Virus record (IMG/VR): IMGVR_UViG_3300044644_001125
Coordinates: 263,257 to 327,256 of that record
Strand: one strand, 5' to 3'
Length of the DNA stretch: 64,000 nt
In this document: piece by piece, positions 45,244 through 63,294 of the stretch
Numbering within the stretch: the stretch's first letter is position 1
Layout: each line of letters opens with the position of its first letter
Made by a program: the position numbers and the translations under genes
The notes under the pieces: generated by a model
Databases searched by the model: none
Told to the model about the DNA's origin: nothing
Seen by the model: only the letters and a program-made list of their open reading frames with translations

Positions 45244-45270
45244 GTTGTCTAAAAGATGATTGAAAAACAG

Positions 45271-45331: not shown

Positions 45332-45628
45332 ATGAAATTCGAAATAGCACCTAAATCAACTGAGATAGAATCCAACTGGTTTGATGCAAAACTCTATTGC
45401 TTCTCCCTTAACATAGATGGTAAGACTGGTTGGAGATTACCAACAAGGGCAGAACTAAATGAAATTTATGAATCTGATAATGATTTCGTTATTTGCACCT
45501 ACTACTGGACATCTGCTGAATTTAGCGGCACCGGTGCTTGGACTCAACTATTCATTAATGGGATCCAGAACTTCCGCACGAAGGATTACGACAAAAATCA
45601 GGTTAGAGCAGTAAGGGACTTAGCATGA
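45332..45628 (+). CDS. DUF1566/Lcl-C (C-type lectin fold) protein
   Basis: W.DAK.YC..L..DG..GWRLPT..EL, YWTS, VRAVRD motifs. Confidence 0.8.
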   Translation: MKFEIAPKSTEIESNWFDAKLYCFSLNIDGKTGWRLPTRAELNEIYESDNDFVICTYYWTSAEFSGTGAWTQLFINGIQNFRTKDYDKNQVRAVRDLA

Positions 45629-45921
45629 AATTTGAAATAGCACCGAAAGAAACAGAGACCCAAGCCAATTGGGATGATGCCCGTTTGTATTGCTTTGCTC
45701 TTAATATAGATGAGAAAGTTGGCTGGAGATTACCTACTATTAAAGAGTTAAACTATATAAATCGTGTGATTAATGATCTTTCAACCGAAGATTACTGGTC
45801 ATCAATAGAACGACCAGACAAAAGATACGCAGAATGCTATACCACAATCGATGGTGGTTATACGGTCAATACATTAAAACACGATTTAGGCTATGTTAGC
45901 GCAGTAAGGGACTTAGTATGA
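45625..45921 (+). CDS. DUF1566/Lcl-C protein
   Basis: WDDARLYC, GWRLPTIKEL, YWSS, VSAVRD. Confidence 0.8.
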   Translation: MKFEIAPKETETQANWDDARLYCFALNIDEKVGWRLPTIKELNYINRVINDLSTEDYWSSIERPDKRYAECYTTIDGGYTVNTLKHDLGYVSAVRDLV

Positions 45922-46217
45922 ACTTTGAAATAGCACCCAAAGAATACGAGATACGAGGAAACTGGGATGATTCCAGATTCTATTGCTTTGCTCTTAATAT
46001 AGATGGAAAATCAGATTGGAGATTACCAACTAAAGAAGAACTTAACGAAATCTTCCAATCAGCACATGATTTCGAGGATGGCTCGTATTGGTCTTCTACT
46101 CCTTCCGATGTTGATGAGGTAGGCGTGCGGGTTCAAATATTCGATACTAGTGGATTCGAATACTCCGCAATAAAGTCCAGTCCCTACGGATATACCAGAG
46201 CCGTCAGAACAATCTAA
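45918..46217 (+). CDS. DUF1566/Lcl-C protein
   Basis: WDDSRFYC, DWRLPTKEEL, YWSST, TRAVR. Confidence 0.8.
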   Translation: MNFEIAPKEYEIRGNWDDSRFYCFALNIDGKSDWRLPTKEELNEIFQSAHDFEDGSYWSSTPSDVDEVGVRVQIFDTSGFEYSAIKSSPYGYTRAVRTI

Positions 46218-46292
46218 TCGTTGCGAGCCACAAACCAGTAAAATCCCACCAGATAAATAGGTTCACTACCAACCAAAACAAGTGAACCTACA

Positions 46293-46814
46293 ATGACCAG
46301 CAAATCAAAAAACAAAGGCAATACATGGGAACGTGAGATTGCAAATCACTTATCCTCCATTTACAATCTAAAATTTTTAAGATGCCAAGGTAGCGGAGCA
46401 TTCGTCGGAGGTAAAAACACACAGCGAAAAGCAGTATTAGATGCTGGTCAAATCCAAAGTTTCAAAGGTGATATTATCCCACCAACCGAATGGACTTCCT
46501 TTAACAGTGAAGCCAAGAACTATGCAGATTTTCCTTTTCATCAGTTATATTCAGGTGAAGTCAAACAACTTGAAACTTGGCTAGGTCAATTGGTTCAAGT
46601 GGCAGATCCAAATGATATGAATATCCTCATGTTTAAGATCACACGTAAAGGAAAGTACGTTGCGGTTGAATCTGACAAAGGATGGGACATATCACATCCT
46701 CATACCAATTACACTTCAGTTAAGTTTGGCAACTGGCAAATCTTTGATTATGATTCTTTTTGGCAACATAATCATCAATTAGTCAAGCAATTAAGCACTA
46801 TTTCGCCAGACTAA
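46293..46814 (+). CDS. Holliday junction resolvase (Hjc-like PD-(D/E)XK)
   Basis: SKNKGNTWERE, SGA, GDI, EAKNY motifs. Confidence 0.75.
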   Translation: MTSKSKNKGNTWEREIANHLSSIYNLKFLRCQGSGAFVGGKNTQRKAVLDAGQIQSFKGDIIPPTEWTSFNSEAKNYADFPFHQLYSGEVKQLETWLGQLVQVADPNDMNILMFKITRKGKYVAVESDKGWDISHPHTNYTSVKFGNWQIFDYDSFWQHNHQLVKQLSTISPD

Positions 46815-46847
46815 ATATCATTTTATTATTTCTCAAAAACTAATACT

Positions 46848-47267
46848 ATGAAAGATAAGGTAATCGTATATACTGATGGTGGGTGCATTCCTAATCCCGG
46901 AAAGGGTGGTTGGGGTGCTGTACTTATGTGCAACAACAAAGAAAAAGAACTCTTTGGTGGTGTAGATGGTACTACTAATAACCGCATGGAACTAATGGCA
47001 GCAATCCAAGCATTAAATGCCTTAACCAGACCATGTGATGTCACAATCTATAGTGATTCAAAATATGTTGTAGATGGAATCACTAAATGGTATCCCAATT
47101 GGATTAAGAACGGTCGTACCAATTTCGTTAATCCAGACTTATGGCATGCACTGGCTGCAGCAGCTAAACCTCACAATGTCACTTGGCAATGGATCAAAGG
47201 CCATTCAGGAATTCCTGGCAATGAACGTGCCGATGAACTGGCTATGCGAGCTATTGAGTATTGTTAA
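46848..47267 (+). CDS. rnhA: Ribonuclease HI
   Basis: [48 protein letters not shown]. Confidence 0.95.
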
Positions 47268-47355
47268 CTGTTTGTTGACTATTATTTTCTTAATAGTTAA
47301 CAATAAGTGCTGTTTTTCTCTACTAAATAGAGTATAATCAATCTATATCAGAACA

Positions 47356-47545
47356 TTACCGAGACCATCTCAAATATATTTTCACAAAAGTGTTGACAAC
47401 AGGGATTAACTAAGTTACAATTAATCATACTAAAGAATTACCCAAAAGCAGTTTACCGAGACCATCTCAAATCCATACCGACACCAAGTCTATATTTTCT
47501 TTTACTTACAGAGACCATCTCAAATCATTACCGACACCAAGTCTA
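47356..47545 (+). repeat. Direct repeats upstream of the structured RNA
   Basis: TTAC(C/A)GAGACCATCTCAAAT at 47356, 47453 and 47506; the last two are each followed by ACCGACACCAAGTCTA. Confidence 0.85.
47393..47421 (+). promoter_or_regulatory. Consensus-like sigma70 promoter driving a non-coding transcript
   Basis: TTGACA(47393-47398)-17 nt-TACAAT(47416-47421); no ORF of 60 aa or more downstream for >1.3 kb. Confidence 0.7.
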
Positions 47546-47589
47546 CTCGCACAAAAGCAATTACTCAATTATCTTTTAGGCACCCGCCA

Positions 47590-48090
47590 AACTTGCTCAC
47601 CGAATTACTAGATAGAACATAGAAAGGTGAGAGAATTGCTAAGAAAGCCGCGCACAGGCGACCATTACGTGCCCTTAAACCCTGGTCTACTTGAATCACA
47701 GGGGATGGAAGTTCCGACATTAGCAACGGAGATATAGTTCACTACCCCACCAGATGAGTTATGGGATATGCCTTCATACAACCCATTTGAACTATAGCAA
47801 AAACGAATAACCAAGGCTAAAGATGGGTTGAGAAAACCCACGTTTACTAGATAAGGTAGCTGTTGTCTAGTAAGCCACCGTCAGATTAATAAGACTGAGC
47901 TCGAGGTACCGGCTGACCGCCTCTGTAATGCTCTACATGCTACTGTGATGCGATGCTTGTACGCAGAACCCTTGGACGTTTCAGTTCCACAATTAGAAAT
48001 GTCCATTGTCCTTTGAATTAACCCGAGTTTTTCGGGTTAAGATGTTCAGCTCCACAACCCGCAGTGAGGGCTCCGCTGGCGCGTCGCTTT
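47590..48090 (+). ncRNA. Putative large structured non-coding RNA (family not recognised)
   Basis: At least nine hand-identified helices (e.g. 47733-41/47788-96, 47844-53/47864-73, 47974-82/47996-48004, 48018-26/48032-40); more GC-rich than flanks; ORF-free; upstream promoter. Strand inferred from the promoter. Confidence 0.6.
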
Positions 48091-48149
48091 AATAATAGAT
48101 TTAATTATTGATTTTAATAATTGTAGGAGCATATAAGATTAAATGAATT

Positions 48150-48655
48150 CTAAAAGATAATGTACCTAATAGATACCTGCTTAAGCCACGCGCACATACA
48201 TTTTTAGATGCATTCGAACCCATACATTTTAGCTGTTTCCATTCGCGCACATACATTTTAGATTCCATTATAGCTTTTTACCAGATGCACACATACATTA
48301 TAAACTCCATACGAACACATACATTTTAAACTAAAAGATAATTCAATTAATAACTCAACTATAAGATCATCTATAAGACCATTAATATAAACATCAATAA
48401 GAACATCATAACTAAAAGATAATAGATCAGTAATTCACATCATCTATAAGACAATTATCTTTTAGTAATCGACATCATCTATAAGACAATCATTAATACA
48501 TTATCTTTTAGTATTATTCTTTTAAATGGATAGCTACGTCTGGAGTTTATTCATTATCTTTTAGTTTCTATTATCTTTTAATGGATAACTGCGTCTAGTG
48601 GTTTCTATTATCTTTTAGTAATGATCATCAGGTGGATGGGTTCATTATCTTTTAG
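48150..48655. repeat. AT-rich iteron-like cluster, candidate replication origin
   Basis: CTAAAAGATAAT forward at 48150, 48331, 48412 and reverse at 48454, 48500, 48553, 48607, 48644 (variant at 48570); CATACATT x5 (48193-48327); CATCTATAAGAC x3 (48368, 48441, 48476). Confidence 0.6.
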
Positions 48656-48698
48656 TGCGTTCGTCAAATAAATAGGTTCCGGTTCATCGCGGGTTTGC

Positions 48699-48706
48699 TA
48701 TAAATA
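48699..48706 (+). promoter_or_regulatory. T4-type late promoter
   Basis: Exact TATAAATA 36 nt before the 48742 start; gp55 is encoded in the window. Confidence 0.7.
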
Positions 48707-48741
48707 CTTGCAATACCCCATTCGAATAAGGAACCCAATCA

Positions 48742-51147
48742 ATGAAAATGTCAGATGTAGACGTCTTAATAGAAAGTACAATCACCGAAGCTCCCGTTGG
48801 TATGTTAAAGCGAGGAGCTCTAAAAGTTGCCAGTAAACTTGGTAGTCAAAAAGCAGCAGGCGCAGAAGTCACTGCAAACATCGCCAATCAGTTAAAGAAA
48901 GATTATTCTCGTTATCTAGGTGTTACTGGTTACGAGCAAGATAAAGAATCACTTGAAGCATTCTTAAATTCAAAAGGTTTATCTGCGGATTCATTGGATT
49001 CTGCCATTTCTTCTGTTTCGGCTGAAGGTCCAACTGGACAAGATTGGCGAATTGATACCGGTCCAAGAACAGGTGCAGCTAATGCAAGAGTAGAACCAGT
49101 TGTTGATATCGGTTCAGCTACAGGTGAAGTACCATCTCTTGATGGTGACAGCCCAATTGAACAAGCCAGAGCTAAACAAGTTGCAGCACAACAACGAGCA
49201 GTTCAACAAATGAGAGGGCAACAACCAGAACAGCCATCTGAACCAGTTACTAAAACAAATAGATTAGCTGGTATGGGTCAAGGCTACGTTCCACCTATCG
49301 AACCATCAGCTGAACAACCAGAAATTGCACAACCAGAGCCATCTGCTACTGGTGCTCAAGCAGCATCTGCATTAGGTCGATTAAAAACACCACAAAACCC
49401 AATGAAAGGTAGAACTTCTTTAGTTAGCAAGTTAAAAGGCCAGCAAGCAGAACCAGAAGTACCTGCAACTGAGCCAACTGCTACAAGAGAAAGACCTGGA
49501 ATCAGTTCACGTGCTGGTAAAGCAGGTGTTGGCCAACCAAAAGCACCTCAATTCAAATCAGTTAGTGCTATGTCTAAAGCCACTTCTGATATCAAAGCAG
49601 AATTAGATACTAAATTGAATGCAATTGATGCGGCTAAAGACGCATTGGCTAAAAGTCCAAGAAGTCAAAAACTAAAAGATGCTTTAAAACAAGCAGAAGC
49701 AGATTATGATTCATTTGTAGCAAGTGAAATCAAGCCAGCTGACCTAAAAGATAAGTTAGCCACTAAAGTTAACCAAATCAAAACAGGTGAAGAACCAACC
49801 AGTACAAATTCTCCAGTGACAAAACCACAATCAAAATATGGTAAAGGGCTAGCTGCTGTTGGTAGAGCATCTGAAGATCAACAACGAAAACGAAACGCGG
49901 CAATGCCTGCATACAATGCCGCTGCGAACGACTACCTAAATGCCGTGAAAACTGCAAAAACGCAAGATGAAAAAGATGCGGCTACTGCAACTTTTGATGA
50001 GTTTAGAAATAAGTTTATTAAAGATTTTGGGTGGGGAAATGATCCCACTATAAATGATGTTATAATCCCATACCCAACGATACAGTCAACTACTAAACCA
50101 AGTACTACACAAGCTGGGCAGATGGAATTGCCAACTGAAGAACCTACAGCGGCACCTGATGTCGAAAAAGTTCAATCTGCGGTTGACAAAGCACAAGCTG
50201 AGTATGATAAAGTCAATAAAACTGGTATCTCTAAGTCTACTAAAGATAAAAACTTAAAGGCTTTGAATGCTGCTAAAGCAGAACTTGCTAAAGCCACTGG
50301 TACTGAACCCGAAGTAGTACCTGCTCCAAAACCAGTTACTATGAAATCTCCAGTTTCGGCAGTTAAGAAAGAACAACCTGCTGCAGTTAAAGCAGAACCT
50401 AAAGAAGAGCCAACTGATAAAATCGGTAAACTAACAGCTAAAGCACAGGAACTTGCTACTGCATTCAAACAAGACCCATCTAACAAGGAATTGGGTAAAC
50501 AAGCAATGGATGCTATCTCTGCACTTAAAGCGGCTAAAGAAGCCGATGTAGAACCAGAAGATGAAATGGATTACAAACCATCATCAATGGGTAGTGAGTT
50601 TAGTAGATTTGCTAAAGCAATGGCACCATCTAAAACTGCATCAAGTGAAGAAGTTCCACCAACTGAAGATGATGAAGATTCTTGGATGGACCAAGAACCA
50701 ATGCCCAAAGCTAAGAAAGAAAAGGCTGCAAAGAATAAAAAGATGGCATTAGCAGCTAGTGTTGAACATGAGTTCGATTATCTTTTAGCAGAAGCGGCAT
50801 TTAGTAATAAACAGATTGATAAAATCATCTTGGCTATTACTCAAGACAATATCCGTAAAGGAATTATCAGTATTCCAGGAGTACCAGCTAGAACTCAACC
50901 GCAAGCTAGACCTGCGCAAGCACAAGCCCAACGACCAGCTGCTAGTCCATATACCGCTCCATCTACTGGTGGTGCACAATATACACAACAACGTGAACAG
51001 CCAACTGGTAAAAGTCTTGATTTAACTGATTTTAATGTTGAAAGATTGATTGGTGCAATCAATCATTTGATGAAAAAAGAAGAACTTCAACGATATGAAG
51101 AAAGACAACTTAAGAAGTTATTGGATGAGTTGAAAACTTTACGTTAA
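48742..51147 (+). CDS. Low-complexity 801-aa protein, candidate internal virion protein
   Basis: Late promoter; N-terminus MKMSDVDVLIESTITEA; Pro/Ala/Lys/Glu-rich and probably largely disordered. Confidence 0.65.
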   Translation: MKMSDVDVLIESTITEAPVGMLKRGALKVASKLGSQKAAGAEVTANIANQLKKDYSRYLGVTGYEQDKESLEAFLNSKGLSADSLDSAISSVSAEGPTGQDWRIDTGPRTGAANARVEPVVDIGSATGEVPSLDGDSPIEQARAKQVAAQQRAVQQMRGQQPEQPSEPVTKTNRLAGMGQGYVPPIEPSAEQPEIAQPEPSATGAQAASALGRLKTPQNPMKGRTSLVSKLKGQQAEPEVPATEPTATRERPGISSRAGKAGVGQPKAPQFKSVSAMSKATSDIKAELDTKLNAIDAAKDALAKSPRSQKLKDALKQAEADYDSFVASEIKPADLKDKLATKVNQIKTGEEPTSTNSPVTKPQSKYGKGLAAVGRASEDQQRKRNAAMPAYNAAANDYLNAVKTAKTQDEKDAATATFDEFRNKFIKDFGWGNDPTINDVIIPYPTIQSTTKPSTTQAGQMELPTEEPTAAPDVEKVQSAVDKAQAEYDKVNKTGISKSTKDKNLKALNAAKAELAKATGTEPEVVPAPKPVTMKSPVSAVKKEQPAAVKAEPKEEPTDKIGKLTAKAQELATAFKQDPSNKELGKQAMDAISALKAAKEADVEPEDEMDYKPSSMGSEFSRFAKAMAPSKTASSEEVPPTEDDEDSWMDQEPMPKAKKEKAAKNKKMALAASVEHEFDYLLAEAAFSNKQIDKIILAITQDNIRKGIISIPGVPARTQPQARPAQAQAQRPAASPYTAPSTGGAQYTQQREQPTGKSLDLTDFNVERLIGAINHLMKKEELQRYEERQLKKLLDELKTLR

Positions 51148-51153
51148 AACTAA

Positions 51154-51176
51154 AATGCCCTCATTTCGAGGGCATT
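51154..51176. terminator. Hairpin terminator between convergent genes
   Basis: aatgccctc-atttc-gagggcatt. Confidence 0.65.
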
Positions 51177-51187
51177 ATCTTTTAGGG

Positions 51188-51391: not shown

Positions 51392-51399
51392 GGGTAGAT

Positions 51400-52254: not shown

Positions 52255-52343
52255 TGGGGGTAATCCTCAGAATAAATACTATAACTAGCCGTATTTAGTG
52301 CTGTAATTTCTCACTAAACTACGCATCAAACAATGGACTAATC

Positions 52344-55869: not shown

Positions 55870-55929
55870 TTAATGAAAAATCCCAAGACATAAATAGGTT
55901 AAACATTCAACAGAATAGGATTAATCTAA

Positions 55930-58900
55930 ATGTCTTGGAAAAAACACTTCAAACCAGTTACTATCGACGGTCACGGTTCTCATAGCCCAATCAGCGGCGG
56001 TGGAAGACCAGGCCCTGCTAAAACTAACTACTCTAGCTTCCTACCAGATGTCTACGCTGGTACACCAAACCGCATCGATAGATACATGCAATATGATACC
56101 ATGGACATGGACTCTGAAGTCAATGCCGCTCTCGATATCATCGCAGAATTCTGTACGCAAAAAGATAAAGAAAATGAAACACCTTTTCATACCTCCTTCC
56201 GTGGACAACCTACCTCCACCGAAGTTAAACTCATTAAAGACTGCTTGCAGAAATGGTGCAAACAACAACAATTCGAAACTCGTATCTTTAGAATCGTCAG
56301 AAATACCTTCAAGTACGGTGACTGCTTCTTCCTAAGAGACCCCGAAACTAAGAAATGGTTGTACGTTGACCCAGTCAAAGTTAGTAAAATTATCGCAAAC
56401 GAATCAGAGGGCAAAATCCCTGAACAATACGTTATCAAAGATATTAACTTTAACTTTAAAAACTTAATCGCCGTAACTCCTCATGGTATCACCAATACCT
56501 CACCCAGCGGTACTGCCAGTTATACTTCAGGTGGCAGCCTAGCTAGAGGTATGGTAGGCGATACAGCTAGAGCTACCGGTACCAGATTCCAAAATGCAAT
56601 CAATGAAATCGCAGTCGATGCCAAAGACGTTGTTCATATCAGCCTCAGTGAAGGTCTTGATAATAACTTCCCATTTGGTAATAGCTTACTCGAATCTGTT
56701 TTCAAAGTCTATAAACAAAAAGAATTGCTCGAAGATGCGGTTATTATCTACAGAATTCAGAGAGCACCAGAGCGTTTGGTGTTTTATGTTGACGTAGGTA
56801 ACATGCCAGCACATTTGGCAATGGGCTTTGTTGAAAGAGTTAAGAATGAGATTCAACAAAGACGTATACCAAGCTCAACAGGCGGTGCATCTGGTAGTAC
56901 AGTCGATTCAAGTTACAATCCACTTTCAGTAGGTGAAAACTTTTATTTGCCTTCCACAAGTGAGGGACGTGGCTCTAGGGTTGAAACATTGCCAGGTGGC
57001 TGTTTCGCAATGGATACTAAAGTATCGTTATTAGATGGTCGTGAACTATCTATCCGTGATATCGAAACTGAACTAAAAGATGGTAAAACCTTATGGACTT
57101 ACTCATGTGAACCAATAACAGGTAAAGTCTTACCCGGATTAATCACATGGGCTGGTGTTACACATAAGTCTGCTAAAGTTATGAAAATAACTTTAGATAA
57201 CGGTGAAACTATTACATGTACACCTGATCACAAGTTCCCAGTATACGAACAAGAGTTTAAACGTGCTGACGAGTTTAAAGTTGGTGATAGTCTGATTCCT
57301 CTTTATAGAAAAACTGAGAAAGTATCAGCAAAAGCCAACGATTACGAACAGTATTTTGATAATGCCGATAAAACTTGGAAATTCACACACAGAACTGTTG
57401 CTGATTATCTAAAAGATGATGTAGTAAAATTCGAAGTATACAAAGAAGAGTACACAAGCGGATTGTATGAAGTTCGTCATCACAAAAACTTCAATCGGTT
57501 CGATAATTCACCAGAAAACCTGTGCTTTATGGGTTGGAGAGACCATATTAGGTTTCATGGCGAAAATTTTGCAAGTACCTTGGAATATCTAAAAGAAAAT
57601 GAACCTGAGTTATACCAAGCACGCTGTGATGCGATAAGCCTCGGTCATACTAAACGATGGGAAGGGCTAGCAGATGAAGATAGAGCCGCTGTTGGTATTA
57701 AATCAGCAGAAGCATGGGCTAGATGTACACCGGAAGAATATGACAGCTGGTGTGAAAGTATTAGTGAGGGGTTGCTAGAGTATTGTGCAAACTTAACACC
57801 TGAAGAAAAAGAAATTCGCGATGCCAATTCGCGTGCTGCTTTTATCATCGGAAACCAGAAGTTCAATGAAAAGATGCAGAATGATCCAGTATTTTATGCG
57901 ATGGTTGTTGGTAAACGAATGACATATTGGACACCAGAGAAGCGTGAATGGCGTGCAGAACAAACACGTGCGAATGGCTTAGTTTTCCGTGAAACTGAAT
58001 CATACAAAGAAAATACCAAAAAATCGGCAGATTCTCAACGTATGAAATATTCACACAAAATGCTGAAATATGTTATAAACTTGGTTAAAGGTAAAACCAC
58101 ATATCAAGTTGGATTAACCGATGTTGTAAACGCATTGAACAATGATCAAGAAATGCTTGATGAATTGTACGAGCTGAATAAAGAAAACACCACGCCAAAT
58201 TGGAAAGTCTCCGACGGCTACACTGAATCGAATGTTAAAACCATGGTTAAACATTTTGGATATGAAAAATGGTCTGATTTCCGTAGAAAAGAAAGCATAC
58301 ACAATCATACAATCACAGCCATTGAATACTTGGATGATGAGATTGAGGTTGGTACGTTGACCATTGATAATGACGAAAAATACCATAATTATCATACATT
58401 TGCGTTGAGTTGTGGGGTATTTGTGTTCAATAGTCAGACAGGTGAAATAACGGATTTGCGCTACTTCACCAATAAGTTGTTTAGAGCTCTCCGTATACCA
58501 GCAAGTTACTTACCAACTGGTATTGAAGAAGCCTCGAATACCGTAGCGGATGGAAAAGTGGGAACTGCGTATATCCAAGAGTTTAGATTTAATGAGTATT
58601 GTAAACGACTACAGAACTTATTGGTACAGACGTTTGATTTGGAGTTTAAACTTTGGTTATATTCGCAAGGTATCAACATTGATAGTAGTTTATTTGAACT
58701 GAAGTTTAATGAGCCGCAGAACTTTGCAGCGTATAGACAAAGTGAGTTAGATACGACTCGAGTGAATATCTTTGCGCAGTTGCAAGAGATACCATATTTG
58801 AGTAAACGCTTTGCAATGAAGCGATTCTTGGGTATGACACAAGAGGAGATCACAGAGAATGAAGCCATGTGGCGTGAAGAGAACGGCCATAAGTTAGAAT

Positions 58901-59100
58901 CATTGGTAGATGGTGCTGGAGAGTTACGTTCTGCTGGGATTTCGCCAAGTGGAATTGCATCTGATATGAGTTCACAAGACGAGCAGGCACCTGAAGGCGT
59001 AGGTCAAGGACCAGACGGTGAGGCTGGTGGTATTGGTTCTGCTCCAGGTCCAATGGGTAATGCGGCACCTGGACCGACTGGTGGCCCAATGGGTATGTAA
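55930..59100 (+). CDS. Portal vertex protein (T4 gp20-like) containing an intein
   Basis: MDMDSEVNAALDIIAE, LLEDAVIIYRIQRAPERLVFYVDVGNMP, DLRYFTNKLFRALRIPASYL. Confidence 0.92.
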   Translation: MSWKKHFKPVTIDGHGSHSPISGGGRPGPAKTNYSSFLPDVYAGTPNRIDRYMQYDTMDMDSEVNAALDIIAEFCTQKDKENETPFHTSFRGQPTSTEVKLIKDCLQKWCKQQQFETRIFRIVRNTFKYGDCFFLRDPETKKWLYVDPVKVSKIIANESEGKIPEQYVIKDINFNFKNLIAVTPHGITNTSPSGTASYTSGGSLARGMVGDTARATGTRFQNAINEIAVDAKDVVHISLSEGLDNNFPFGNSLLESVFKVYKQKELLEDAVIIYRIQRAPERLVFYVDVGNMPAHLAMGFVERVKNEIQQRRIPSSTGGASGSTVDSSYNPLSVGENFYLPSTSEGRGSRVETLPGGCFAMDTKVSLLDGRELSIRDIETELKDGKTLWTYSCEPITGKVLPGLITWAGVTHKSAKVMKITLDNGETITCTPDHKFPVYEQEFKRADEFKVGDSLIPLYRKTEKVSAKANDYEQYFDNADKTWKFTHRTVADYLKDDVVKFEVYKEEYTSGLYEVRHHKNFNRFDNSPENLCFMGWRDHIRFHGENFASTLEYLKENEPELYQARCDAISLGHTKRWEGLADEDRAAVGIKSAEAWARCTPEEYDSWCESISEGLLEYCANLTPEEKEIRDANSRAAFIIGNQKFNEKMQNDPVFYAMVVGKRMTYWTPEKREWRAEQTRANGLVFRETESYKENTKKSADSQRMKYSHKMLKYVINLVKGKTTYQVGLTDVVNALNNDQEMLDELYELNKENTTPNWKVSDGYTESNVKTMVKHFGYEKWSDFRRKESIHNHTITAIEYLDDEIEVGTLTIDNDEKYHNYHTFALSCGVFVFNSQTGEITDLRYFTNKLFRALRIPASYLPTGIEEASNTVADGKVGTAYIQEFRFNEYCKRLQNLLVQTFDLEFKLWLYSQGINIDSSLFELKFNEPQNFAAYRQSELDTTRVNIFAQLQEIPYLSKRFAMKRFLGMTQEEITENEAMWREENGHKLESLVDGAGELRSAGISPSGIASDMSSQDEQAPEGVGQGPDGEAGGIGSAPGPMGNAAPGPTGGPMGM
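57001..58431 (+). mobile_element. 477-aa intein with an HNH-type endonuclease insert
   Basis: Starts GG|CFAMDTKV, has block B TCTPDHKF, ends FALSCGVFVFN|S; internal RHHKNFNRFDNSPENL...H...H. Confidence 0.88.
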
Positions 59101-59128
59101 GCGTAGTATAAATAAGTTTGAATGTTTT

Positions 59129-59176
59129 GCCCCTGTTTTCCTAGTAATGTTTATTAGGATTGCAGGGGTTTTTTAT
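59129..59176 (+). terminator. Intrinsic terminator after portal
   Basis: cccctg...cctagtaa/ttattagg...cagggg followed by T6. Confidence 0.6.
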
Positions 59177-59188
59177 TGGTTGGGTATA

Positions 59189-59212
59189 TGGCTCGGCGTT
59201 AACACGCCTCGC
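59189..59212 (-). repeat. GCGA-stem-loop-GAGCCA element (minus strand)
   Basis: Reverse complement reads gcga-ggcgt-gtta-acgcc-gagcca. Confidence 0.8.
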
Positions 59213-59246
59213 AAGATAAGATTGAAATTATCTTTTAGAAAACTAC

Positions 59247-59276
59247 TTGACATCTATTATCTTTTAGTATTAGTAT
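59247..59276 (+). promoter_or_regulatory. Sigma70-like promoter with 12-mer site in the spacer
   Basis: TTGACA-18 nt-TAGTAT; ATTATCTTTTAG at 59256-59267 and 59227-59238. Confidence 0.55.
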
Positions 59277-59317
59277 GGGTCAATAAATACAGCAACTAGA
59301 CAACGGCAGGTATAACT

Positions 59318-60466
59318 ATGAGAATAAGTGAATTGATAGAAGCAAGGAAAAATCCAGATAAGAATCCAAAAATATCAGTATGGGACTATGTGAATGCTGA
59401 ATTACCAAAAGCGGATGAAATCGCAGATGTTAGTAATATGTTTGTTAGTTTCACCACTATCGATAAGTTGGGTATCAACCCAAACTCAACATATAATACA
59501 CCACTAGGTATATACGCATATCCAGGCGATTATGTGCAATACAAAGCACGTTACAATACAAATGATTTACCGTTTGCTGGCGGTAGCGAATATGCTAATG
59601 TATTCAAAGTAACTGGTAATATCGTCAACCTAAGTGAACTATCATCGGCTGACGAATTGAAGTATCACCAACAACTCAGCGAAGTATATGCAACTGCAGT
59701 GAAACCCCTTGGTGTGTCATGGAAAACTGCAGTGGATACTGTATACGAGTTGATAATTGAATCGGACAACGAAGCAAGGGTAAAATCACCGGGTGGAAAA
59801 CTGTGGTATATAATGATGAAACTTACAACACTACCGACAAGATCGGTGACATATGCTTGGAATACCAAACCACATATTGCTTGGAATTCACTTTTTCGTC
59901 GAATTGGTATCGATGGTTGTATTGATAACGGGGATTCGATTATTCACCCAGTAGAACCAACTCAAGCCGTATTTTTTTCAAAAACCGTAATCAAAAACAA
60001 CGTTAGATTACTCAATAAGTGGACAACTGCATCGATTAATATGGGAACTGCTAGAGGTATGTCGGCCCAGTATGCAATTGGTAAACTAGCAAATATGACC
60101 GATCAAGAACTCGAAGACTACGTGAAATCTGTTACACATGGTATCAAGTATGTTAAACAACCAACTGAAGAACTACAATTGGCTGCGGTTGGTAGTAATG
60201 CCCGTGCTATCGAGTATATTAAAAATCCAACTGAAAAAGTGCAAATGATGGCTATTAACACTGCTCCTTTTAATATAAAATACATCACAAACCCAAGTGA
60301 AGCCATCCAATTGGCAGCTGTTGCCAAAGCAGCAATATCAATACAGCATATTGACAATCCAACCGAAAAGGTTCAAATATTAGCGATTAAGCAAGAGGGT
60401 AATGTTATGATTGACTATATCAAAAACCCACACCCGAATGTGGTAAAACTAGTTGGAAAAATCTGA
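59318..60466 (+). CDS. Hypothetical protein with C-terminal ~22-aa helical repeats (DUF4116-like)
   Basis: Repeats (A)IxYIxNP(T/S)ExxQxxA(V/I) x4-5; N-terminus MRISELIEA. Confidence 0.7.
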   Translation: MRISELIEARKNPDKNPKISVWDYVNAELPKADEIADVSNMFVSFTTIDKLGINPNSTYNTPLGIYAYPGDYVQYKARYNTNDLPFAGGSEYANVFKVTGNIVNLSELSSADELKYHQQLSEVYATAVKPLGVSWKTAVDTVYELIIESDNEARVKSPGGKLWYIMMKLTTLPTRSVTYAWNTKPHIAWNSLFRRIGIDGCIDNGDSIIHPVEPTQAVFFSKTVIKNNVRLLNKWTTASINMGTARGMSAQYAIGKLANMTDQELEDYVKSVTHGIKYVKQPTEELQLAAVGSNARAIEYIKNPTEKVQMMAINTAPFNIKYITNPSEAIQLAAVAKAAISIQHIDNPTEKVQILAIKQEGNVMIDYIKNPHPNVVKLVGKI

Positions 60467-60476
60467 GTTAACATAC

Positions 60477-60500
60477 AAGGGCTATCCATGTAGCCCTTTT
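60477..60500 (+). terminator. Intrinsic terminator
   Basis: aagggcta-tccatg-tagccctt plus T tract. Confidence 0.75.
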
Positions 60501-60546
60501 CTTTACTAAAAGATAATTAACCTATCTATTGCGAAACGTAAAACAC

Positions 60547-60574
60547 TTGACATCCTCTAATATCCCGCTATAAT
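60547..60574 (+). promoter_or_regulatory. Sigma70-like promoter for the second accessory array
   Basis: TTGACA-16 nt-TATAAT; CTAAAAGATAAT upstream at 60506. Confidence 0.7.
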
Positions 60575-60596
60575 ATCCCTAACTTAATCAACCGGA

Positions 60597-60908
60597 GTGA
60601 AACAAATGGCAGAATTCACAATCAAGTTTAGACCCGAGGATTTCATGCCACCGAGAGGGATGAAGAATCGACCACGCTCGCAATCGTTATGGTCTAAGGA
60701 TTATGGGATGTGCACCTACATCAAACCACACGAAGCATTTAATCATACTCTGTATAGAAAGTTGTTCTATCTAGGCAATTTCGCACCGTTGCCAGTCCAA
60801 CGCAAGTGGGAGCCAGTGTATAATAAATTCATGAGTAGACATGCTCCGTATTTTGTGCGATCGGTTTACAAACGCTGGGGTCGAAAATACACTGGGAAGT
60901 TCTTCTAA
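60597..60908 (+). CDS. Hypothetical protein; paralog of the left-edge ORF
   Basis: APLPVQxKW and TIxFRP motifs shared with 3..329. Start may be the ATG at 60606. Confidence 0.7.
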   Translation: MKQMAEFTIKFRPEDFMPPRGMKNRPRSQSLWSKDYGMCTYIKPHEAFNHTLYRKLFYLGNFAPLPVQRKWEPVYNKFMSRHAPYFVRSVYKRWGRKYTGKFF

Positions 60909-60941
60909 AAGATAATTGAATCGCAGTTCAACCATAATCTT

Positions 60942-60965
60942 GCGAGCACCGCTAGGTGCGAGCCA
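60942..60965 (+). repeat. GCGA-stem-loop-GAGCCA element
   Basis: gcgagcaccgctaggtgcgagcca followed by ATAGGAAACCAA and ATG. Confidence 0.85.
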
Positions 60966-60977
60966 ATAGGAAACCAA

Positions 60978-61286
60978 ATGAAATTCGAAATAGCACCTAA
61001 ATCGACAGAGATCCAAACCAACTGGGAAGATGCCAGACTCTACTGCTTCTCTCTTAATATAGACGGTAAAACCGGATGGCGATTACCAAGTGTTTATGAA
61101 TTAGAATCGTTTACCAGATCAACCAATATGGAAAATGCTCTGTATTGGACTGGTACATCATACAAGAGTTACCCAAATGGCGCTACTTCGATTCATTTTG
61201 GTAAAAACAGTTGCTCCGTCCATTTCTTTACCAAAGAATCTTCGTTGTGGGTTAGAGCAGTGAGAGATCTAAAAGATGATCTTTGA
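60978..61286 (+). CDS. DUF1566/Lcl-C protein
   Basis: WEDARLYC, GWRLPS..EL, YWTG, VRAVRDLKDD. Confidence 0.8.
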   Translation: MKFEIAPKSTEIQTNWEDARLYCFSLNIDGKTGWRLPSVYELESFTRSTNMENALYWTGTSYKSYPNGATSIHFGKNSCSVHFFTKESSLWVRAVRDLKDDL

Positions 61287-61566
61287 AATAGCACCCAAAT
61301 CAACAGAGATCCAAGCCAGCTGGTATGAAGCTAGAATGTATTGCTTCTCCCTTAATATCGATGGTAAGATCGGATGGAGATTACCAACTAAAGAAGAATT
61401 GAATGAGATATACCTTTCAGAAAATGATTTTGAAAAACGTTGGTATTGGTCCTCTACTGAGTACCTTGGCAACGGCGCCTGGGTTCAGTATTTCGGCGAT
61501 GGCGACCAGGGCAACTTCGGTAAGAGCAGCGGCGGCTTCTACGTTAGAGCCATTAGATCAATATAA
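61276..61566 (+). CDS. DUF1566/Lcl-C protein with a DGR-like variable region
   Basis: GWRLPTKEEL, WYWSSTE; 61465-61539 is 47/75 GC with 16 of 25 codons ending in C. Confidence 0.82.
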   Translation: MIFEIAPKSTEIQASWYEARMYCFSLNIDGKIGWRLPTKEELNEIYLSENDFEKRWYWSSTEYLGNGAWVQYFGDGDQGNFGKSSGGFYVRAIRSI

Positions 61567-61571
61567 TAGAA

Positions 61572-61595
61572 GCGAGCACCGCTAGGTGCGAGCCA
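61572..61595 (+). repeat. GCGA-stem-loop-GAGCCA element
   Basis: Exact copy 5 nt after the stop of 61276..61566. Confidence 0.85.
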
Positions 61596-61609
61596 ATAGG
61601 AAAACAACA

Positions 61610-61933
61610 ATGATTGAAATAGCACCCAAAGAATACGAAATTAGTATAGGTTACCAAGAAGCAAGGATGTATTGCTTTTCACTTAACATTGATGGTAAAA
61701 TAGGTTGGAGATTACCTACAATTGAAGAGTTGGAAAACATCTATACCTGTGTGAATGATTTTATGAAAAACGGGTGGTATTGGTCATCGACTGAAGTTGA
61801 AAACGGAGTTTGGTTTAAATCATTTAGTCGATACCCGAAACACGGACCAACTGGATGGAAAGATATCATCTATTTTGACGAATTTCATACAAATGTAAAC
61901 TCCTGTTTAGTCAGACCAGTGAGAGACCTATGA
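61610..61933 (+). CDS. DUF1566/Lcl-C protein
   Basis: MIEIAPKE start after AGGA; GWRLPTIEEL, YWSSTE, VRPVRD. Confidence 0.8.
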   Translation: MIEIAPKEYEISIGYQEARMYCFSLNIDGKIGWRLPTIEELENIYTCVNDFMKNGWYWSSTEVENGVWFKSFSRYPKHGPTGWKDIIYFDEFHTNVNSCLVRPVRDL

Positions 61934-62271
61934 CTTATTTTTCAACAAAACTTTACCCGCCAACTCCACGATTACCATGTCAACTGTCGGATTCTATGTA
62001 TTGGAAGAAAATGTCTTGGGAAGAAGCCAAGATGTATTGCTTTTCTCTTAATGACAGGGGTATAATTGGATGGAGATTACCTACGTTATTTGAGTTGAAC
62101 AGTATTATATTACGAGTATCCTCACCACTAGACCATGAATTTGAGATTTGGTCAGAAGAAAATGGACAGGACATTGCTTGGTTTATGTCTAGTCGGAATA
62201 GTCAGAGATTGGCAAGCAAGTATATGGATGATATTTACTGTATCCCAGTTCGAGATCTAAAAGACGATTAA
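61930..62271 (+). CDS. DUF1566/Lcl-C protein (divergent)
   Basis: SWEEAKMYC, GWRLPTLFEL, CIPVRDLKDD. Confidence 0.75.
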   Translation: MTYFSTKLYPPTPRLPCQLSDSMYWKKMSWEEAKMYCFSLNDRGIIGWRLPTLFELNSIILRVSSPLDHEFEIWSEENGQDIAWFMSSRNSQRLASKYMDDIYCIPVRDLKDD

Positions 62272-62291
62272 TACCACTGAGAAAAACCAAA

Positions 62292-62588
62292 ATGAACTTT
62301 GAAATAGCACCAAAATCAACCGAAATACTATCCACATGGAATGATGCCCGTTTGTATTGTTTCTCTCTTATTATTGATGATAAAACTGGATGGAGATTAC
62401 CCACTAAAGATGAATTAAACGAAATATACGAATCAGAAAATGATTTTGAAAAACGTTGGTATTGGTCTTCTACTGAGTATAATGGCAACAGCGGCATCTT
62501 GGGTCAGAATATGAATGGTGGCATCCAGGGCTACGGTGGCGGTAAGAACTACGCCGTCGCCTACGTTAGAGCCATCAGATCAATATAA
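62292..62588 (+). CDS. DUF1566/Lcl-C protein with a DGR-like variable region
   Basis: Constant flanks nearly identical to 61276..61566; 62481-62561 is rich in NNC/NNT codons. Confidence 0.82.
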   Translation: MNFEIAPKSTEILSTWNDARLYCFSLIIDDKTGWRLPTKDELNEIYESENDFEKRWYWSSTEYNGNSGILGQNMNGGIQGYGGGKNYAVAYVRAIRSI

Positions 62589-62592
62589 TATC

Positions 62593-62616
62593 GCGAGCAC
62601 CGCTAGGTGCGAGCCA
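62593..62616 (+). repeat. GCGA-stem-loop-GAGCCA element
   Basis: Exact copy 4 nt after the stop of 62292..62588. Confidence 0.85.
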
Positions 62617-62630
62617 ATAAGGAAAACCAA

Positions 62631-63026
62631 ATGACAGAAGACCAATTCCTGCAATCCCTAAAACTAAAGCCTAAGCCAATTGAACCAATCGAGGTTTACG
62701 AGTCTTTGAATATAGAAATTGCACCCAGTCATTACTGTAGGCAACTGACTTGGGCGGATGCAAAACTTTACGCGTTTGCTTTAAACATAGAAGGTAAGAT
62801 CGGATGGAGATTACCGTGTGACGAAGAAATGGGTTGCTTACTTGAAAATCATCCAAGATTTAACGGTTTCTGGTATATGCAATACTGGTGTGATGTAATC
62901 AAATCCGGCCGTATAACATCTAAAGAGTATACTGCGTGGTTGGAACCCACTGGTCTACATTTCCAAACTCGTAATGGCGAATATGTACATAATACTGTCT
63001 TTGTCCGAGATCTAAAAGATGATTGA
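62631..63026 (+). CDS. DUF1566/Lcl-C protein (divergent)
   Basis: ATG after AAGGA; IEIAPS...TWADAKLY, GWRLP..EE, FVRDLKDD. Confidence 0.75.
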   Translation: MTEDQFLQSLKLKPKPIEPIEVYESLNIEIAPSHYCRQLTWADAKLYAFALNIEGKIGWRLPCDEEMGCLLENHPRFNGFWYMQYWCDVIKSGRITSKEYTAWLEPTGLHFQTRNGEYVHNTVFVRDLKDD

Positions 63027-63294
63027 GATATCACCTAAATCATTCGAAAAGCGTCTAACCCACGACGATGCTAAATTTTACGTATTCTCACTAGGTAATG
63101 GTTGGCGATTCCCAACAGTTGAGGAATTGCGAATGATACATGGTTCTGATAATGATTTGGAAAACGAGTTACATTTTACTAATTCCGATACGTTAGTTTC
63201 TTTTAGTTATCGGCGTTTCATCAAATGTTTCGAACGGAATGAATGCGAAGATGATTGTTTTATCAGACCAGTCAGAGATCTAAAAGATGATTAA
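63019..63294 (+). CDS. DUF1566/Lcl-C protein (divergent, short)
   Basis: MIEISPK, GWRFPTVEEL, IRPVRDLKDD. Confidence 0.7.
   Translation: MIEISPKSFEKRLTHDDAKFYVFSLGNGWRFPTVEELRMIHGSDNDLENELHFTNSDTLVSFSYRRFIKCFERNECEDDCFIRPVRDLKDD

What the first reader, a model, noticed from the sequence alone, without database searches (positions are those of the whole stretch)
45332..63294. Ten-member DUF1566 paralog expansion in two cassette-like arrays with shared junctions
Seen: three genes at 45332-46217 and seven at 60978-63294 share M(K/N/I)FEIAPK starts and GWRLPT cores, but their C-termini diverge strongly. Four end in RDLKDD, encoded by gagatctaaaaga(t/c)gat, which contains the 12-mer variant and in two cases supplies the ATG of the next gene. 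45332..45628 keeps the VR spacing (A-W-x-Q-x-F-x-x-G-x-Q) with partly drifted codons, like an older diversified copy. These ~100-aa proteins are standalone lectin domains without a fibre stalk and sit behind sigma70 promoters. Inference: a repertoire of early-expressed binding proteins (possibly anti-defence or host-protein binders) produced by duplication plus DGR fixation, rather than receptor-binding tail tips.
Basis: partly seen in the sequence, partly recalled or inferred. Interest (0 to 1): 0.6.

Follow-up and report, generated by a model that had tools for sequence, protein, structure and literature searches.

The report
Retroelement-written lectin gene family in phage
The ten small lectin-like genes are real, but they belong to an 83-gene family in a 327-kb lake jumbo phage. 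The variable ends of several copies were written by a mutagenic reverse-transcriptase system (DGR) that sister strains carry and this genome lacks.

Summary
Ten intact ORFs of 91-131 aa sit at the stated coordinates, with the described starts, GWRLPT cores and RDLKDD junctions.

- **Scale.** The window is the last 64 kb of a circularly closed 327-kb lake-water jumbo phage with a T4-like portal. A family profile finds 83 paralogs in 21 clusters, 7.6% of the genome. Distant relatives have none.
- **Fold.** One member models confidently as a single C-type-lectin-like domain, closest to the Legionella Lcl C-terminal domain.
- **DGR link.** Gene 61276-61566 differs from a template repeat (TR) at 24 of 45 adenine sites but 1 of 64 other sites (p=9e-11). 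62292-62588 and 45332-45628 are progressively decayed copies.
- **Where the DGR is.** That TR, with Avd and a DGR-type RT, lies on contigs of sister strains whose flanking genes are 95-96% identical, including a 271-kb scaffold that also carries small paralogs. This genome has no RT, TR or Avd.
- **Turnover.** Copy number varies among close relatives (0/2/3 and 0/5/6/7), with breakpoints at repeated junctions.
- **Promoters.** 13 of 21 clusters sit behind near-consensus sigma-70 promoters.
- **Open.** Origin by duplication plus DGR writing is well supported. A role as early intracellular binders is untested.

The parts
45219..45240 (+). Terminator-like hairpin after the gp46/SbcC-like gene. 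It is flanked by two copies of the CTAAAAGATAAT motif (45197-45211 and 45249-45263).
45271..45298 (+). Sigma-70-like promoter (TTGACA, 16-nt spacer, TATACT; 11 of 12 matches) 34 nt upstream of array 1.
45332..45628 (+). Array 1, gene 1 (98 aa, Lcl_C 44.2 bits). It carries an old, drifted VR at about 45497-45609. Against the TR it differs at 21 of 48 adenine sites and 18 of 65 other sites.
45625..45921 (+). Array 1, gene 2 (98 aa, Lcl_C 34.6 bits). It overlaps gene 1 by 4 nt. No TR similarity is left in the DNA.
45918..46217 (+). Array 1, gene 3 (99 aa, Lcl_C 41.3 bits; DWRLPT core).
60477..60498 (+). Terminator-like hairpin that closes the preceding unit. A 12-mer motif copy follows at 60506-60520. 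The left edge of the 2.9-kb indel relative to L084 is at about 60525.
60547..60574 (+). Perfect sigma-70 consensus promoter (TTGACA, 16-nt spacer, TATAAT; 12 of 12) that heads the array-2 transcription unit.
60597..60908 (+). 103-aa ORF of unknown function, the first gene of the unit. It has no Pfam or PHROG match.
60942..60964 (+). Hairpin repeat 1 (GCGAG, 4-nt arm, GNTA loop, 4-nt arm, CGAGCC), preceded by an exact 12-mer motif at 60905-60919. It is the left breakpoint of the 630-bp indel that holds the first two genes.
60978..61286 (+). Array 2, gene A (102 aa, Lcl_C 45.5 bits, ends RDLKDDL). Found only in this genome among the four relatives compared.
61276..61566 (+). Array 2, gene B (96 aa, Lcl_C 48.1 bits; the structure was modelled on this gene). 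Its ATG lies inside gene A's GATGAT.
61444..61552 (+). Variable region (VR) of gene B. Over 109 nt without gaps it differs from the L179 TR at 24 of 45 adenine sites and 1 of 64 other sites (Fisher p=9e-11). GC is 57%, against 36% for the rest of the gene.
61572..61594 (+). Hairpin repeat 2, the right breakpoint of the A+B indel.
61610..61933 (+). Array 2, gene C (107 aa from the ATG; the listed GTG start at 61586 lies in the hairpin). Lcl_C 33.9 bits.
61930..62271 (+). Array 2, gene D (113 aa, ends RDLKDD, divergent N-terminus). Lcl_C 30.5 bits.
62292..62588 (+). Array 2, gene E (98 aa, Lcl_C 37.3 bits). Its partly decayed VR lies at about 62460-62576 and differs from the TR at 19 of 45 adenine sites and 10 of 66 other sites, with two 3-nt insertions. 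Orthologs in L081 and L082 differ from it almost only inside the VR.
62593..62615 (+). Hairpin repeat 3.
62631..63026 (+). Array 2, gene F (131 aa from the ATG, with an N-terminal extension; ends RDLKDD). Lcl_C is weak at 18.7 bits, but the family profile scores E=4e-30.
63019..63294 (+). Array 2, gene G (91 aa, MIEISPK start inside the ATGATTGA overlap; ends RDLKDD). Lcl_C is weak at 14 bits, but the family profile scores E=6e-29.
63303..63320 (+). Terminator-like hairpin that closes the array-2 unit.
63376..63398 (+). Hairpin repeat 4, with both stem arms changed in a compensatory way (GTGCC paired with GGCAC). It heads the next unit.

Best explanation
**What it is (shown).** The ten genes are members of an 83-gene, lineage-specific family of stand-alone proteins of about 97 aa. 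Each is a single C-type-lectin-like domain (Lcl_C/DUF1566). The host genome is a 327-kb freshwater jumbo phage with a T4-like portal.

**How the repertoire arose (shown, except where marked).** Two processes act together.
1. *DGR writing.* A diversity-generating retroelement (Avd, TR and reverse transcriptase) sits on a strain-variable island of about 9 kb in sister strains. It copied its template into the 3' 110 nt of several small paralogs and randomised the adenine positions. That the copying was retrohoming is inferred from the sequence pattern. In the window, gene B (61276-61566) is a nearly fresh product. Gene E and 45332-45628 are older, drifting products. The other seven genes have lost any DNA trace or were never written.
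2. *Cassette recombination.* Gene units are gained and lost by recombination between repeated junctions. These are the RDLKDD/ATGATTGA overlap, the conserved 5' coding end, and a 23-nt hairpin repeat. The result is copy-number differences among near-identical strains.

This genome has no DGR, so its variants are frozen and decay by ordinary mutation.

**What the proteins do (inferred).** They have no signal peptide and no stalk or anchor. Most clusters sit behind strong sigma-70 consensus promoters. They are therefore most likely made early by host RNA polymerase as soluble intracellular binders. Each would present a different ligand-binding face encoded by its VR, aimed at variable host targets such as defence or takeover targets.
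For: **Family and fold**
- Pfam Lcl_C matches in the ten genes.
- 62 PF07603 matches and 83 profile matches genome-wide, totalling 24,951 nt.
- AlphaFold2 model of gene B: pLDDT 97.4. The best Foldseek match is 8q4e, the Lcl C-terminal domain, at TM 0.85, followed by C-type lectins.

**DGR writing**
- Among the young subgroup, codon positions 1-2 vary while position 3 and the scaffold codons are fixed.
- In the VR core, pairwise difference is 0.52 at TR-adenine sites and 0.17 elsewhere. Upstream, position 3 varies most: 0.37, against 0.17 and 0.12.
- The TR predicted from that pattern was found exactly in metagenome contigs L178 and L179, next to an Avd and an RT with IGNLSSQ and YVDD motifs.
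- Gene B differs from that TR at 24 of 45 adenine sites and 1 of 64 other sites, p=9e-11.
- The paralog at genome 240057 differs from a second TR allele (L238) at 16 of 45 adenine sites and 1 of 62 other sites.
- The small paralogs share only 33-43% aa identity with the cognate 176-aa target. Their VR scaffold is nevertheless at least 98% identical to the TR. That argues for copying from the TR, not inheritance by duplication.

**The DGR belongs to sister strains**
- L241's flanking genes are 95-96% identical to genome 19610-21408.
- The exact Avd lies on a 271,688-bp scaffold. That scaffold also carries at least 11 small paralogs about 100 kb away.

**The DGR is absent here**
- No RVT_1 match, no RT motif and no AAY-rich TR, and no Avd or RT homolog.
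- The contig ends overlap by 176 bp, so the genome is closed.
- The RT motif search found an RT in 79 of 89 control DGR loci.

**Cassette turnover**
- Array 1 has 3, 2 or 0 copies. Array 2 has 7, 5, 6 or 0 copies.
- The A+B indel is bounded by two hairpin repeats. The whole unit from promoter to terminator is absent in L084.

**Selection and expression**
- All ORFs are intact, and the scaffold shows the pattern of purifying selection.
- Promoters of at least 11 of 12 matches number 96 in the genome, against 7-22 in shuffles. They precede 13 of 21 clusters, p=2e-10.
Against: - No RT, TR or Avd is present in this genome, so no diversification can be shown here. The TRs come from other contigs.
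- In the DGR-bearing 271-kb scaffold the small paralogs show 5-6 non-adenine mismatches in 63-65 sites to that genome's own TR. The adjacent large target shows 0 in 67. The small genes may therefore be only occasional or former targets.
- Gene E's orthologs differ partly at non-adenine sites.
- Seven of the ten window genes show no TR trace.
- The IMH and downstream element needed for homing are only loosely similar to those of the cognate target.
- Nothing measures expression time or protein location. The one RNA-library contig that matches a paralog could be DNA carry-over.
- In relatives the DGR islands lie beside fibre genes. This keeps a virion role open.
- The paralog tree is poorly resolved.
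Confidence: 0.6

Rival explanations
1. The small proteins are virion components. They would be accessory adhesin modules that dock onto the fibre or whisker apparatus and widen or tune host recognition, like classical DGR-diversified receptor-binding proteins.
For: - Characterised phage DGR targets are receptor-binding tail proteins (established knowledge; PMC10743442 abstract).
- In relatives, both DGR loci lie next to fibre-like genes. One target is an FN3 plus lectin protein directly after a fibre gene.
- Array 2 lies just downstream of the portal gene.
Against: - The proteins consist of one 91-131-aa domain with no stalk, anchor or N-terminal adaptor.
- There are 83 separate genes in 21 clusters, mostly outside structural modules. 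Array 1 lies between a recombination nuclease and an RNase H.
- Near-consensus sigma-70 promoters precede 13 of 21 clusters. In T4-like phages such promoters mark early genes, not late structural ones (established knowledge).
Confidence: 0.2
2. The genes are a store of variant 3' cassettes. These are recombined into the fibre-associated lectin gene, giving antigenic variation by gene conversion. The protein products matter little.
For: - The cassettes share conserved 5' and 3' flanks with variable centres.
- Mosaic identity occurs between paralogs. In gene B versus its L082 counterpart, a 66-nt middle block is 98% identical next to a 5' part with many differences.
Against: - Every copy keeps a start codon, a ribosome-binding site, an open frame and the fold-critical residues.
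- The scaffold part shows purifying selection, with codon position 3 varying most.
- The clusters have their own promoters and terminators.
- This genome has no large lectin-tipped recipient gene. ORF 179139-181367 shares only the first 107 aa with the relatives' target.
Confidence: 0.07
3. No retroelement was involved. One lectin domain was captured and then diverged by ordinary duplication, mutation and positive selection.
For: - No RT or TR is present in the genome.
- Most paralogs (about 65 of 83) show no TR similarity.
Against: - Gene B and the paralog at genome 240057 show adenine-specific differences to real TRs, 24/45 versus 1/64 and 16/45 versus 1/62.
- The codon-position pattern in the VR is reversed relative to the rest of the gene.
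- The VR has a high GC content of 47-58%, inside genes of 30-38% GC.
Confidence: 0.05

Closest known systems
DGR variable proteins with a C-type-lectin fold (Mtd of Bordetella phage BPP-1, Treponema TvpA; the DUF1566 class of DGR targets)
   Same: - The variable region lies at the 3' end of a lectin-fold domain.
- AAY template codons put the variation in codon positions 1-2.
- Differences to a TR are adenine-specific.
- The TR sits between an Avd and a DGR-type RT in the sister strains.
- The 33-nt core of the TR is the same as in 89 unrelated GC-rich phage DGRs.
   Different: - The targets are minimal stand-alone domains of about 97 aa, not the tips of large fibre or surface proteins.
- There are dozens of them, scattered over more than 300 kb.
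- They are apparently early genes.
- The genome in hand has VRs but no DGR.
Legionella pneumophila Lcl C-terminal domain (Pfam PF07603; PDB 8q4e)
   Same: Sequence family and predicted fold: TM 0.85, rmsd 2.2 A, 29% identity.
   Different: In Lcl the domain is the tip of a collagen-like surface adhesin. Here it is the whole protein, with no signal peptide or stalk, and it is encoded by a virus.
Lineage-specific gene expansions in jumbo phages, such as the ~35 zinc-ribbon copies in Bacillus phage G (PMC7824862)
   Same: A small-domain family is amplified in one jumbo-phage lineage and is absent from relatives.
   Different: - There are about 83 copies, more than the ~35 that the survey called unprecedented.
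- The survey found no reverse-transcriptase-diversified lectin (FGS) domains in 224 jumbo phages.
- Here a mutagenic retroelement contributed to the divergence.
Multi-target DGRs acting on paralogous genes in cellular genomes, such as cyanobacteria (PMC7517822; title and abstract only)
   Same: One retroelement is associated with several paralogous targets, some of them remote from the RT.
   Different: This case is viral. The number of family members is far larger. The DGR is an accessory island that is missing from some strains.

Membership tests
Pfam PF07603 (Lcl_C / DUF1566) | Profile match at or above the curated gathering score of 34.9 bits | tested here: met
   Five of the ten genes score 37.3-48.1 bits. 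Three score 30.5-34.6 and two score 14-18.7. All ten score E<=1e-28 against the paralog profile.
Pfam PF07603 (Lcl_C / DUF1566) | C-type-lectin-like fold resembling the solved Lcl C-terminal domain | tested here: met
   The AlphaFold2 model of 61276-61566 has pLDDT 97.4 and pTM 0.88. The top Foldseek hit is 8q4e_A at TM 0.85 and E=9e-7, followed by snake and animal C-type lectins. Only one of the ten genes was modelled.
DGR variable protein (target gene) | A VR homologous to a TR, with differences restricted to TR adenines | tested here: met
   - Gene B: 24 of 45 adenine sites versus 1 of 64 other sites (p=9e-11).
- Gene E: 19 of 45 versus 10 of 66.
- 45332-45628: 21 of 48 versus 18 of 65.
- The criterion is met for one window gene, weakly for two, and not for seven.
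- The TR is taken from sister-strain contigs.
DGR variable protein (target gene) | A cognate reverse transcriptase in the same genome | tested here: not met
   - No RVT_1 match at E<=1.
- No ORF with IGxxxSQ...YxDD. The same search found an RT in 79 of 89 control loci.
- No homolog of the sister-strain RT.
- The genome is closed by a 176-bp end overlap.
DGR variable protein (target gene) | A template repeat (TR) and an Avd accessory gene in the same genome | tested here: not met
   No AAY-rich copy of the scaffold is present. BLAST with the VR returned only paralog genes. No Avd homolog was found.
DGR variable protein (target gene) | An IMH at the 3' end of the VR and a downstream hairpin that direct homing | tested here: inconclusive
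   Past the scaffold, gene B's end (AGATCAAT) resembles the cognate VR end more than the TR end (AGATTATG). It is one codon shorter. A 5-bp hairpin follows 6 nt after the stop, but the same hairpin occurs 37 times in the genome.
Phage tail-fibre / receptor-binding protein | An N-terminal anchor or stalk, location in the structural module, and late expression | tested here: not met
   The proteins are single-domain and 91-131 aa. Array 1 lies among DNA-metabolism genes. Sigma-70 consensus promoters lie upstream. Virion presence itself is not testable with these tools.
Early genes transcribed by host RNA polymerase | A sigma-70 consensus promoter upstream, and transcription soon after infection | tested here: inconclusive
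   Promoter matches are present and enriched: 13 of 21 clusters, p=2e-10. Timing cannot be measured. The only RNA-library evidence is one contig of another paralog.

The most novel reading that the evidence does not exclude
A jumbo phage keeps a library of dozens of small cytoplasmic lectin-fold binders, used early in infection against variable host targets such as defence systems. The library is seeded by a DGR that writes remote targets more than 100 kb away. The DGR itself is a strain-variable accessory island. DGR-bearing strains would generate new binders. DGR-less strains such as this one would inherit frozen variants through recombination at the shared cassette junctions. This would be a population-level, antibody-like repertoire in a virus.
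Probability: 0.25. Interest if true: 0.85.

Novelty: new variant of a known kind. Interest (0 to 1): 0.68.

Why it matters
In phages, DGRs are known almost only as devices that retune one receptor-binding tail protein. In this case the same chemistry has written into a family of minimal, stand-alone lectin domains, amplified to about 83 genes (7.6% of a jumbo genome) and placed behind host-type promoters.

If these proteins work inside the cell, targeted hypermutation would extend from host recognition to the intracellular arms race. The work would also supply a natural set of very small, highly evolvable binding scaffolds.

The finding also shows that a DGR can be an accessory island of a phage pan-genome, leaving orphan variable regions in strains that lack it. 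Surveys that look for a VR only beside an RT miss that situation (PMC8144416).

The graded decay series among the paralogs gives a built-in record of when each copy was last written.

Tried and rejected
- **Cultured phage records.** Megablast of the 20-kb region found only a 197-bp portal match to E. coli jumbo phages. tblastn of gene B found six weak hits in small Pseudomonas and Burkholderia phages. No cultured relative carries the family.
- **B and E as a TR/VR pair.** I considered whether genes B and E form a TR/VR pair with each other. Rejected: neither is adenine-rich at the variable sites, so both are VRs.
- **Generic TR core.** A search of IMG/VR found 89 contigs. All are GC-rich unrelated phages, useful only as a control.
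- **Lineage-specific VR end.** A search of IMG/VR found only four contigs of close relatives and no TR. Four of those relatives' contigs have no RT. One (L174) could not be searched.
- **The 271-kb DGR-bearing scaffold.** It could not be searched whole. Only two 10-20-kb pieces were read.
- **Laying public contigs on array 2.** Contigs break inside or beside the VRs of genes B and E, and many joints link paralogs. Contigs cannot separate repeat-induced breaks from VR microdiversity, so this gave no verdict on ongoing diversification.
- **Paralog tree.** It is poorly resolved, with 52 of 77 inner branches open. It is used only to say that the window's arrays are not single clades.
- **Literature.** A search for HbP1 was uninformative. 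No paper in the held library describes this family in jumbo phages.
- **Other checks.** No tRNA genes lie in 40000-64000. No complex prediction was run, because no specific partner is claimed.

Full report
**1. The observation**

The ten ORFs are in the window as described. Three lie at 45332-46217 with 4-nt overlaps, and seven lie at 60978-63294. They align over their whole length. The N-terminal half is conserved (E4, I5, P7, A19, Y22, F24, L26, G33, W34, R35, L36, P37, E41) and the C-terminal half is divergent.

Four genes end in RDLKDD, coded by gagatctaaaaga(t/c)gat. In two cases that string holds the ATG of the next gene, at 61276 and 63019.

Pfam Lcl_C (PF07603, formerly DUF1566) matches five genes above its cut-off, three just below and two weakly.

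Two details need correcting. The GTG starts listed at 61586 and 62607 lie inside a conserved upstream hairpin, so the real starts are most likely the ATGs at 61610 and 62631.

**2. The scale was hidden by the window edge**

The window is the last 64 kb of a 327,256-bp virus record. The record's two ends overlap by 176 bp with two mismatches, so it is a closed, essentially complete genome.

PF07603 matches 62 places in this genome. A profile built from the ten genes finds 82 ORFs, and a second round finds 83. These have a median length of 97 aa, total 24,951 nt (7.6% of the genome) and fall into 21 clusters. The largest cluster has 17 genes in a row.

Nineteen members end in RDLKDD, and 19 junctions carry the identical 8-nt overlap ATGATTGA within a junction of about 30 nt that is nearly invariant.

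The phage has a T4-type portal containing an intein, a gp46-like nuclease subunit, an RNase H and a T4 baseplate protein. Its only DNA match among cultured phages is to the portal of 350-384-kb E. coli jumbo phages. It occurs in lake-water metagenomes from 24 studies.

**3. Fold**

AlphaFold2, using an alignment of 35 paralogs, gives gene B (61276-61566) a confident single-domain model with pLDDT 97.4 and pTM 0.88. Its best structural match is the Legionella Lcl C-terminal domain (8q4e, TM 0.85), followed by many C-type lectins. A profile search of PDB sequences finds the same entry.

The proteins have no signal peptide, stalk or second domain.

**4. A DGR signature**

In a young subgroup of paralogs the last 110 nt or so follow a fixed scaffold. 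Scaffold codons are identical in DNA. The codons between them vary in positions 1 and 2 but keep C or T in position 3.

Among seven members that align without gaps, pairwise difference is 0.52 at the predicted template-adenine sites and 0.17 elsewhere. Upstream, the usual pattern of purifying selection holds (codon positions 1, 2, 3 = 0.17, 0.12, 0.37). In the VR this is reversed (0.34, 0.36, 0.23). The VR has 47-58% GC inside genes of 30-38% GC.

This is what retrohoming from an AAY-rich template repeat produces.

**5. No DGR in this genome**

- RVT_1 finds nothing at E<=1.
- No ORF carries the DGR RT motifs, and no AAY-rich copy of the scaffold exists.
- BLAST of the VRs returns only paralog genes.

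As a control, the 33-nt core of the predicted TR occurs exactly in 89 IMG/VR contigs. All are unrelated GC-rich phages. In 79 of them the same motif search finds an RT beside the TR, and in 78 a VR copy.

**6. The DGR is in sister strains**

The lineage-specific TR predicted from the paralogs was found exactly in two low-GC metagenome contigs, L178 and L179. The order there is VR end of a cut target gene, hairpin, Avd, TR, RT with IGNLSSQ and YVDD motifs.

| Gene | TR compared | Adenine sites differing | Other sites differing |
|---|---|---|---|
| B (61276-61566) | L179 | 24 of 45 | 1 of 64 (p=9e-11) |
| E (62292-62588) | L179 | 19 of 45 | 10 of 66 |
| 45332-45628 | L179 | 21 of 48 | 18 of 65 |
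| genome 240057 | L238 allele | 16 of 45 | 1 of 62 |

The other seven window genes retain no similarity to the TR. At least three TR alleles exist in the population.

The exact Avd protein is on record in 31 blocks of the contig collection, including a 271,688-bp scaffold.

In L241 the two genes beside the DGR are 95-96% identical to genome 19610-21408. In this genome that gene abuts the fibre-like gene 15165-19613 with a 4-nt overlap. The island of about 9 kb is therefore simply absent. In relatives it holds the target, Avd, TR, RT, a sulfotransferase, glycosyl- and methyl-transferases and further lectin genes.

A second DGR, with an RT 69% identical, sits in L180 and L181 beside fibre genes. 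Its target is an FN3 plus lectin protein of 321 aa. Genes of L180 are 96-100% identical to this genome's 184-190 kb region. Avd, TR and RT are missing here as well, next to a TnpB-type insertion and a truncated gene.

**7. Were the small genes really written by the DGR?**

The small paralogs share only 33-43% amino-acid identity with the 176-aa cognate target. Their VR scaffold is nevertheless at least 98% identical to the TR at non-adenine sites. That step in identity is expected from copying of the TR into the gene, not from descent by duplication.

The 271-kb DGR-bearing scaffold also carries an array of at least 11 small paralogs about 100 kb from the RT. Those copies show 5-6 non-adenine mismatches in 63-65 sites to their own TR. 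The large two-domain lectin gene next to the DGR shows 0 in 67.

The small genes are thus occasional or past targets rather than the main current one. TR allele differences explain part of the mismatches.

**8. Turnover**

- Between the nuclease gene and the PDDEXK gene there are three paralogs here. Strains with 95% identical neighbours have two, and a strain at 82% has none.
- Array 2 has seven genes here. A strain with a 98% identical neighbour gene has five, strains at 93% have six, and a strain at 85% has none.
- The 630-bp piece holding genes A and B is bounded by two copies of the 23-nt hairpin repeat.
- In L084 the whole unit from just after the terminator at 60477-60498 to about 63454 is missing.
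- Distant relatives (64-69% identity; one 353-kb record is 98% complete) have no PF07603 match at all.
- The quick tree is poorly resolved. It places the seven array-2 genes and the three array-1 genes in scattered positions. The copies with a DGR signature fall in one short-branched group. The window's arrays are therefore mosaics of old and young cassettes, not recent local duplications.
- Orthologs of gene E differ almost only inside the VR. Gene B and its L082 counterpart have many differences in the 5' part, a nearly identical middle block and a VR re-randomised at the template-adenine positions.

**9. Expression signals**

Array 1 follows a terminator and a TTGACA-16-TATACT promoter. Array 2 is a unit bounded by a perfect TTGACA-16-TATAAT promoter at 60547 and a terminator at 63303.

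Genome-wide there are 96 promoter matches of at least 11 of 12 positions, against 7-22 in shuffles. Of the 21 paralog clusters, 13 have a co-oriented match within 500 nt upstream, and 8 of those are perfect. The binomial p is 2e-10.

In T4-type phages such promoters drive early genes. That link is established knowledge, and its application to these arrays is inference. One metatranscriptome contig matches another paralog, but this could be DNA carry-over.

**10. Interpretation**

The origin of the repertoire by DGR writing plus recombination at cassette junctions is well supported.

The function is inferred. The proteins are soluble, probably early, and each shows a different VR-encoded face. 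I favour intracellular binders of variable host targets.

A virion-adhesin role is the main rival, because the DGR islands in relatives lie next to fibre genes. A silent-cassette role is unlikely, given the intact frames, ribosome-binding sites, promoters and purifying selection.

**11. Novelty**

A survey of 224 jumbo phages found no RT-diversified lectin (FGS) domains. It called about 35 copies of a zinc ribbon in phage G an unprecedented expansion (PMC7824862). The large DGR survey states that it could not detect remote targets (PMC8144416). No paper in the held library describes this family.

I file it as a new variant of a known kind: DGR variable proteins, but minimal, massively amplified, apparently non-structural, and orphaned in this strain.

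No sequence here was taken for human.

Noticed in passing
window, 28 places, e.g. 45197, 45249, 47565, 48150-48655 (ten copies), 55739, 60506, 60905: The 15-mer CTAAAAGATAATTGA (core 12-mer CTAAAAGATAAT) occurs 28 times with up to 2 mismatches, against 0.44 expected. Copies are mostly intergenic and on both strands. They often lie beside terminators and upstream of transcription units, including the portal gene. The RDLKDD* codons are a coding version of the motif. It is probably a phage-specific promoter or regulator site.
   Followed up: partly
window 60942-60964, 61572-61594, 62593-62615, 63376-63398; 37 copies in the whole genome: A 23-nt repeat (GCGAG, 4-nt arm, GNTA loop, 4-nt arm, CGAGCC) folds as a 5-bp stem flanked by tandem G-A and closing G-C pairs (z about -3). 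Five different compensatory stem variants occur. It lies in 5' leaders just before ribosome-binding sites and also acts as an indel breakpoint. Its function is unknown.
   Followed up: partly
window 55930-59100 (+): The T4-type portal gene (gp20) is interrupted by an intein (Intein_splicing domain, residues 366-822).
   Followed up: no
window 16962-30551 (-): A single ORF of 4529 aa lies on the minus strand within a block of large genes that are probably structural. It was not analysed.
   Followed up: no
window 47300-48740: This 1.4-kb stretch has no sizeable ORF and no tRNA. It is packed with about ten copies of the 12-mer motif on both strands. It may be a regulatory or origin region.
   Followed up: no
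window 63825-64000 and genome 1-176: The two ends of the record overlap by 176 bp with two mismatches. The genome is therefore circularly closed or terminally redundant, although it is catalogued as linear and 92% complete.
   Followed up: yes
genome 172502-173779, 182523-183791, 252990-254261 (outside the window); L180 1745-3449: IS200/605-type TnpB-like genes are present. One lies directly after a 73-aa stump of a sulfotransferase/TPR gene, at the locus where relatives L180 and L181 carry a second DGR. This suggests loss linked to an insertion sequence.
   Followed up: partly
L181 3143-6040; L241 1486-4005; L238 1-4344: Sister strains carry two different DGR loci, with RTs 69% identical to each other. 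One has an FN3 plus lectin target of 321 aa after a fibre gene. The other has a 176-aa target and further two-domain lectin genes, in an island with sulfotransferase and glycosyltransferase genes.
   Followed up: partly
window 59318-60466 (+): This 382-aa protein has a C-terminal run of repeats of about 18 aa (NPTEKVQ-like). It matches only PHROGs of unknown function and lies directly upstream of the array-2 unit.
   Followed up: no
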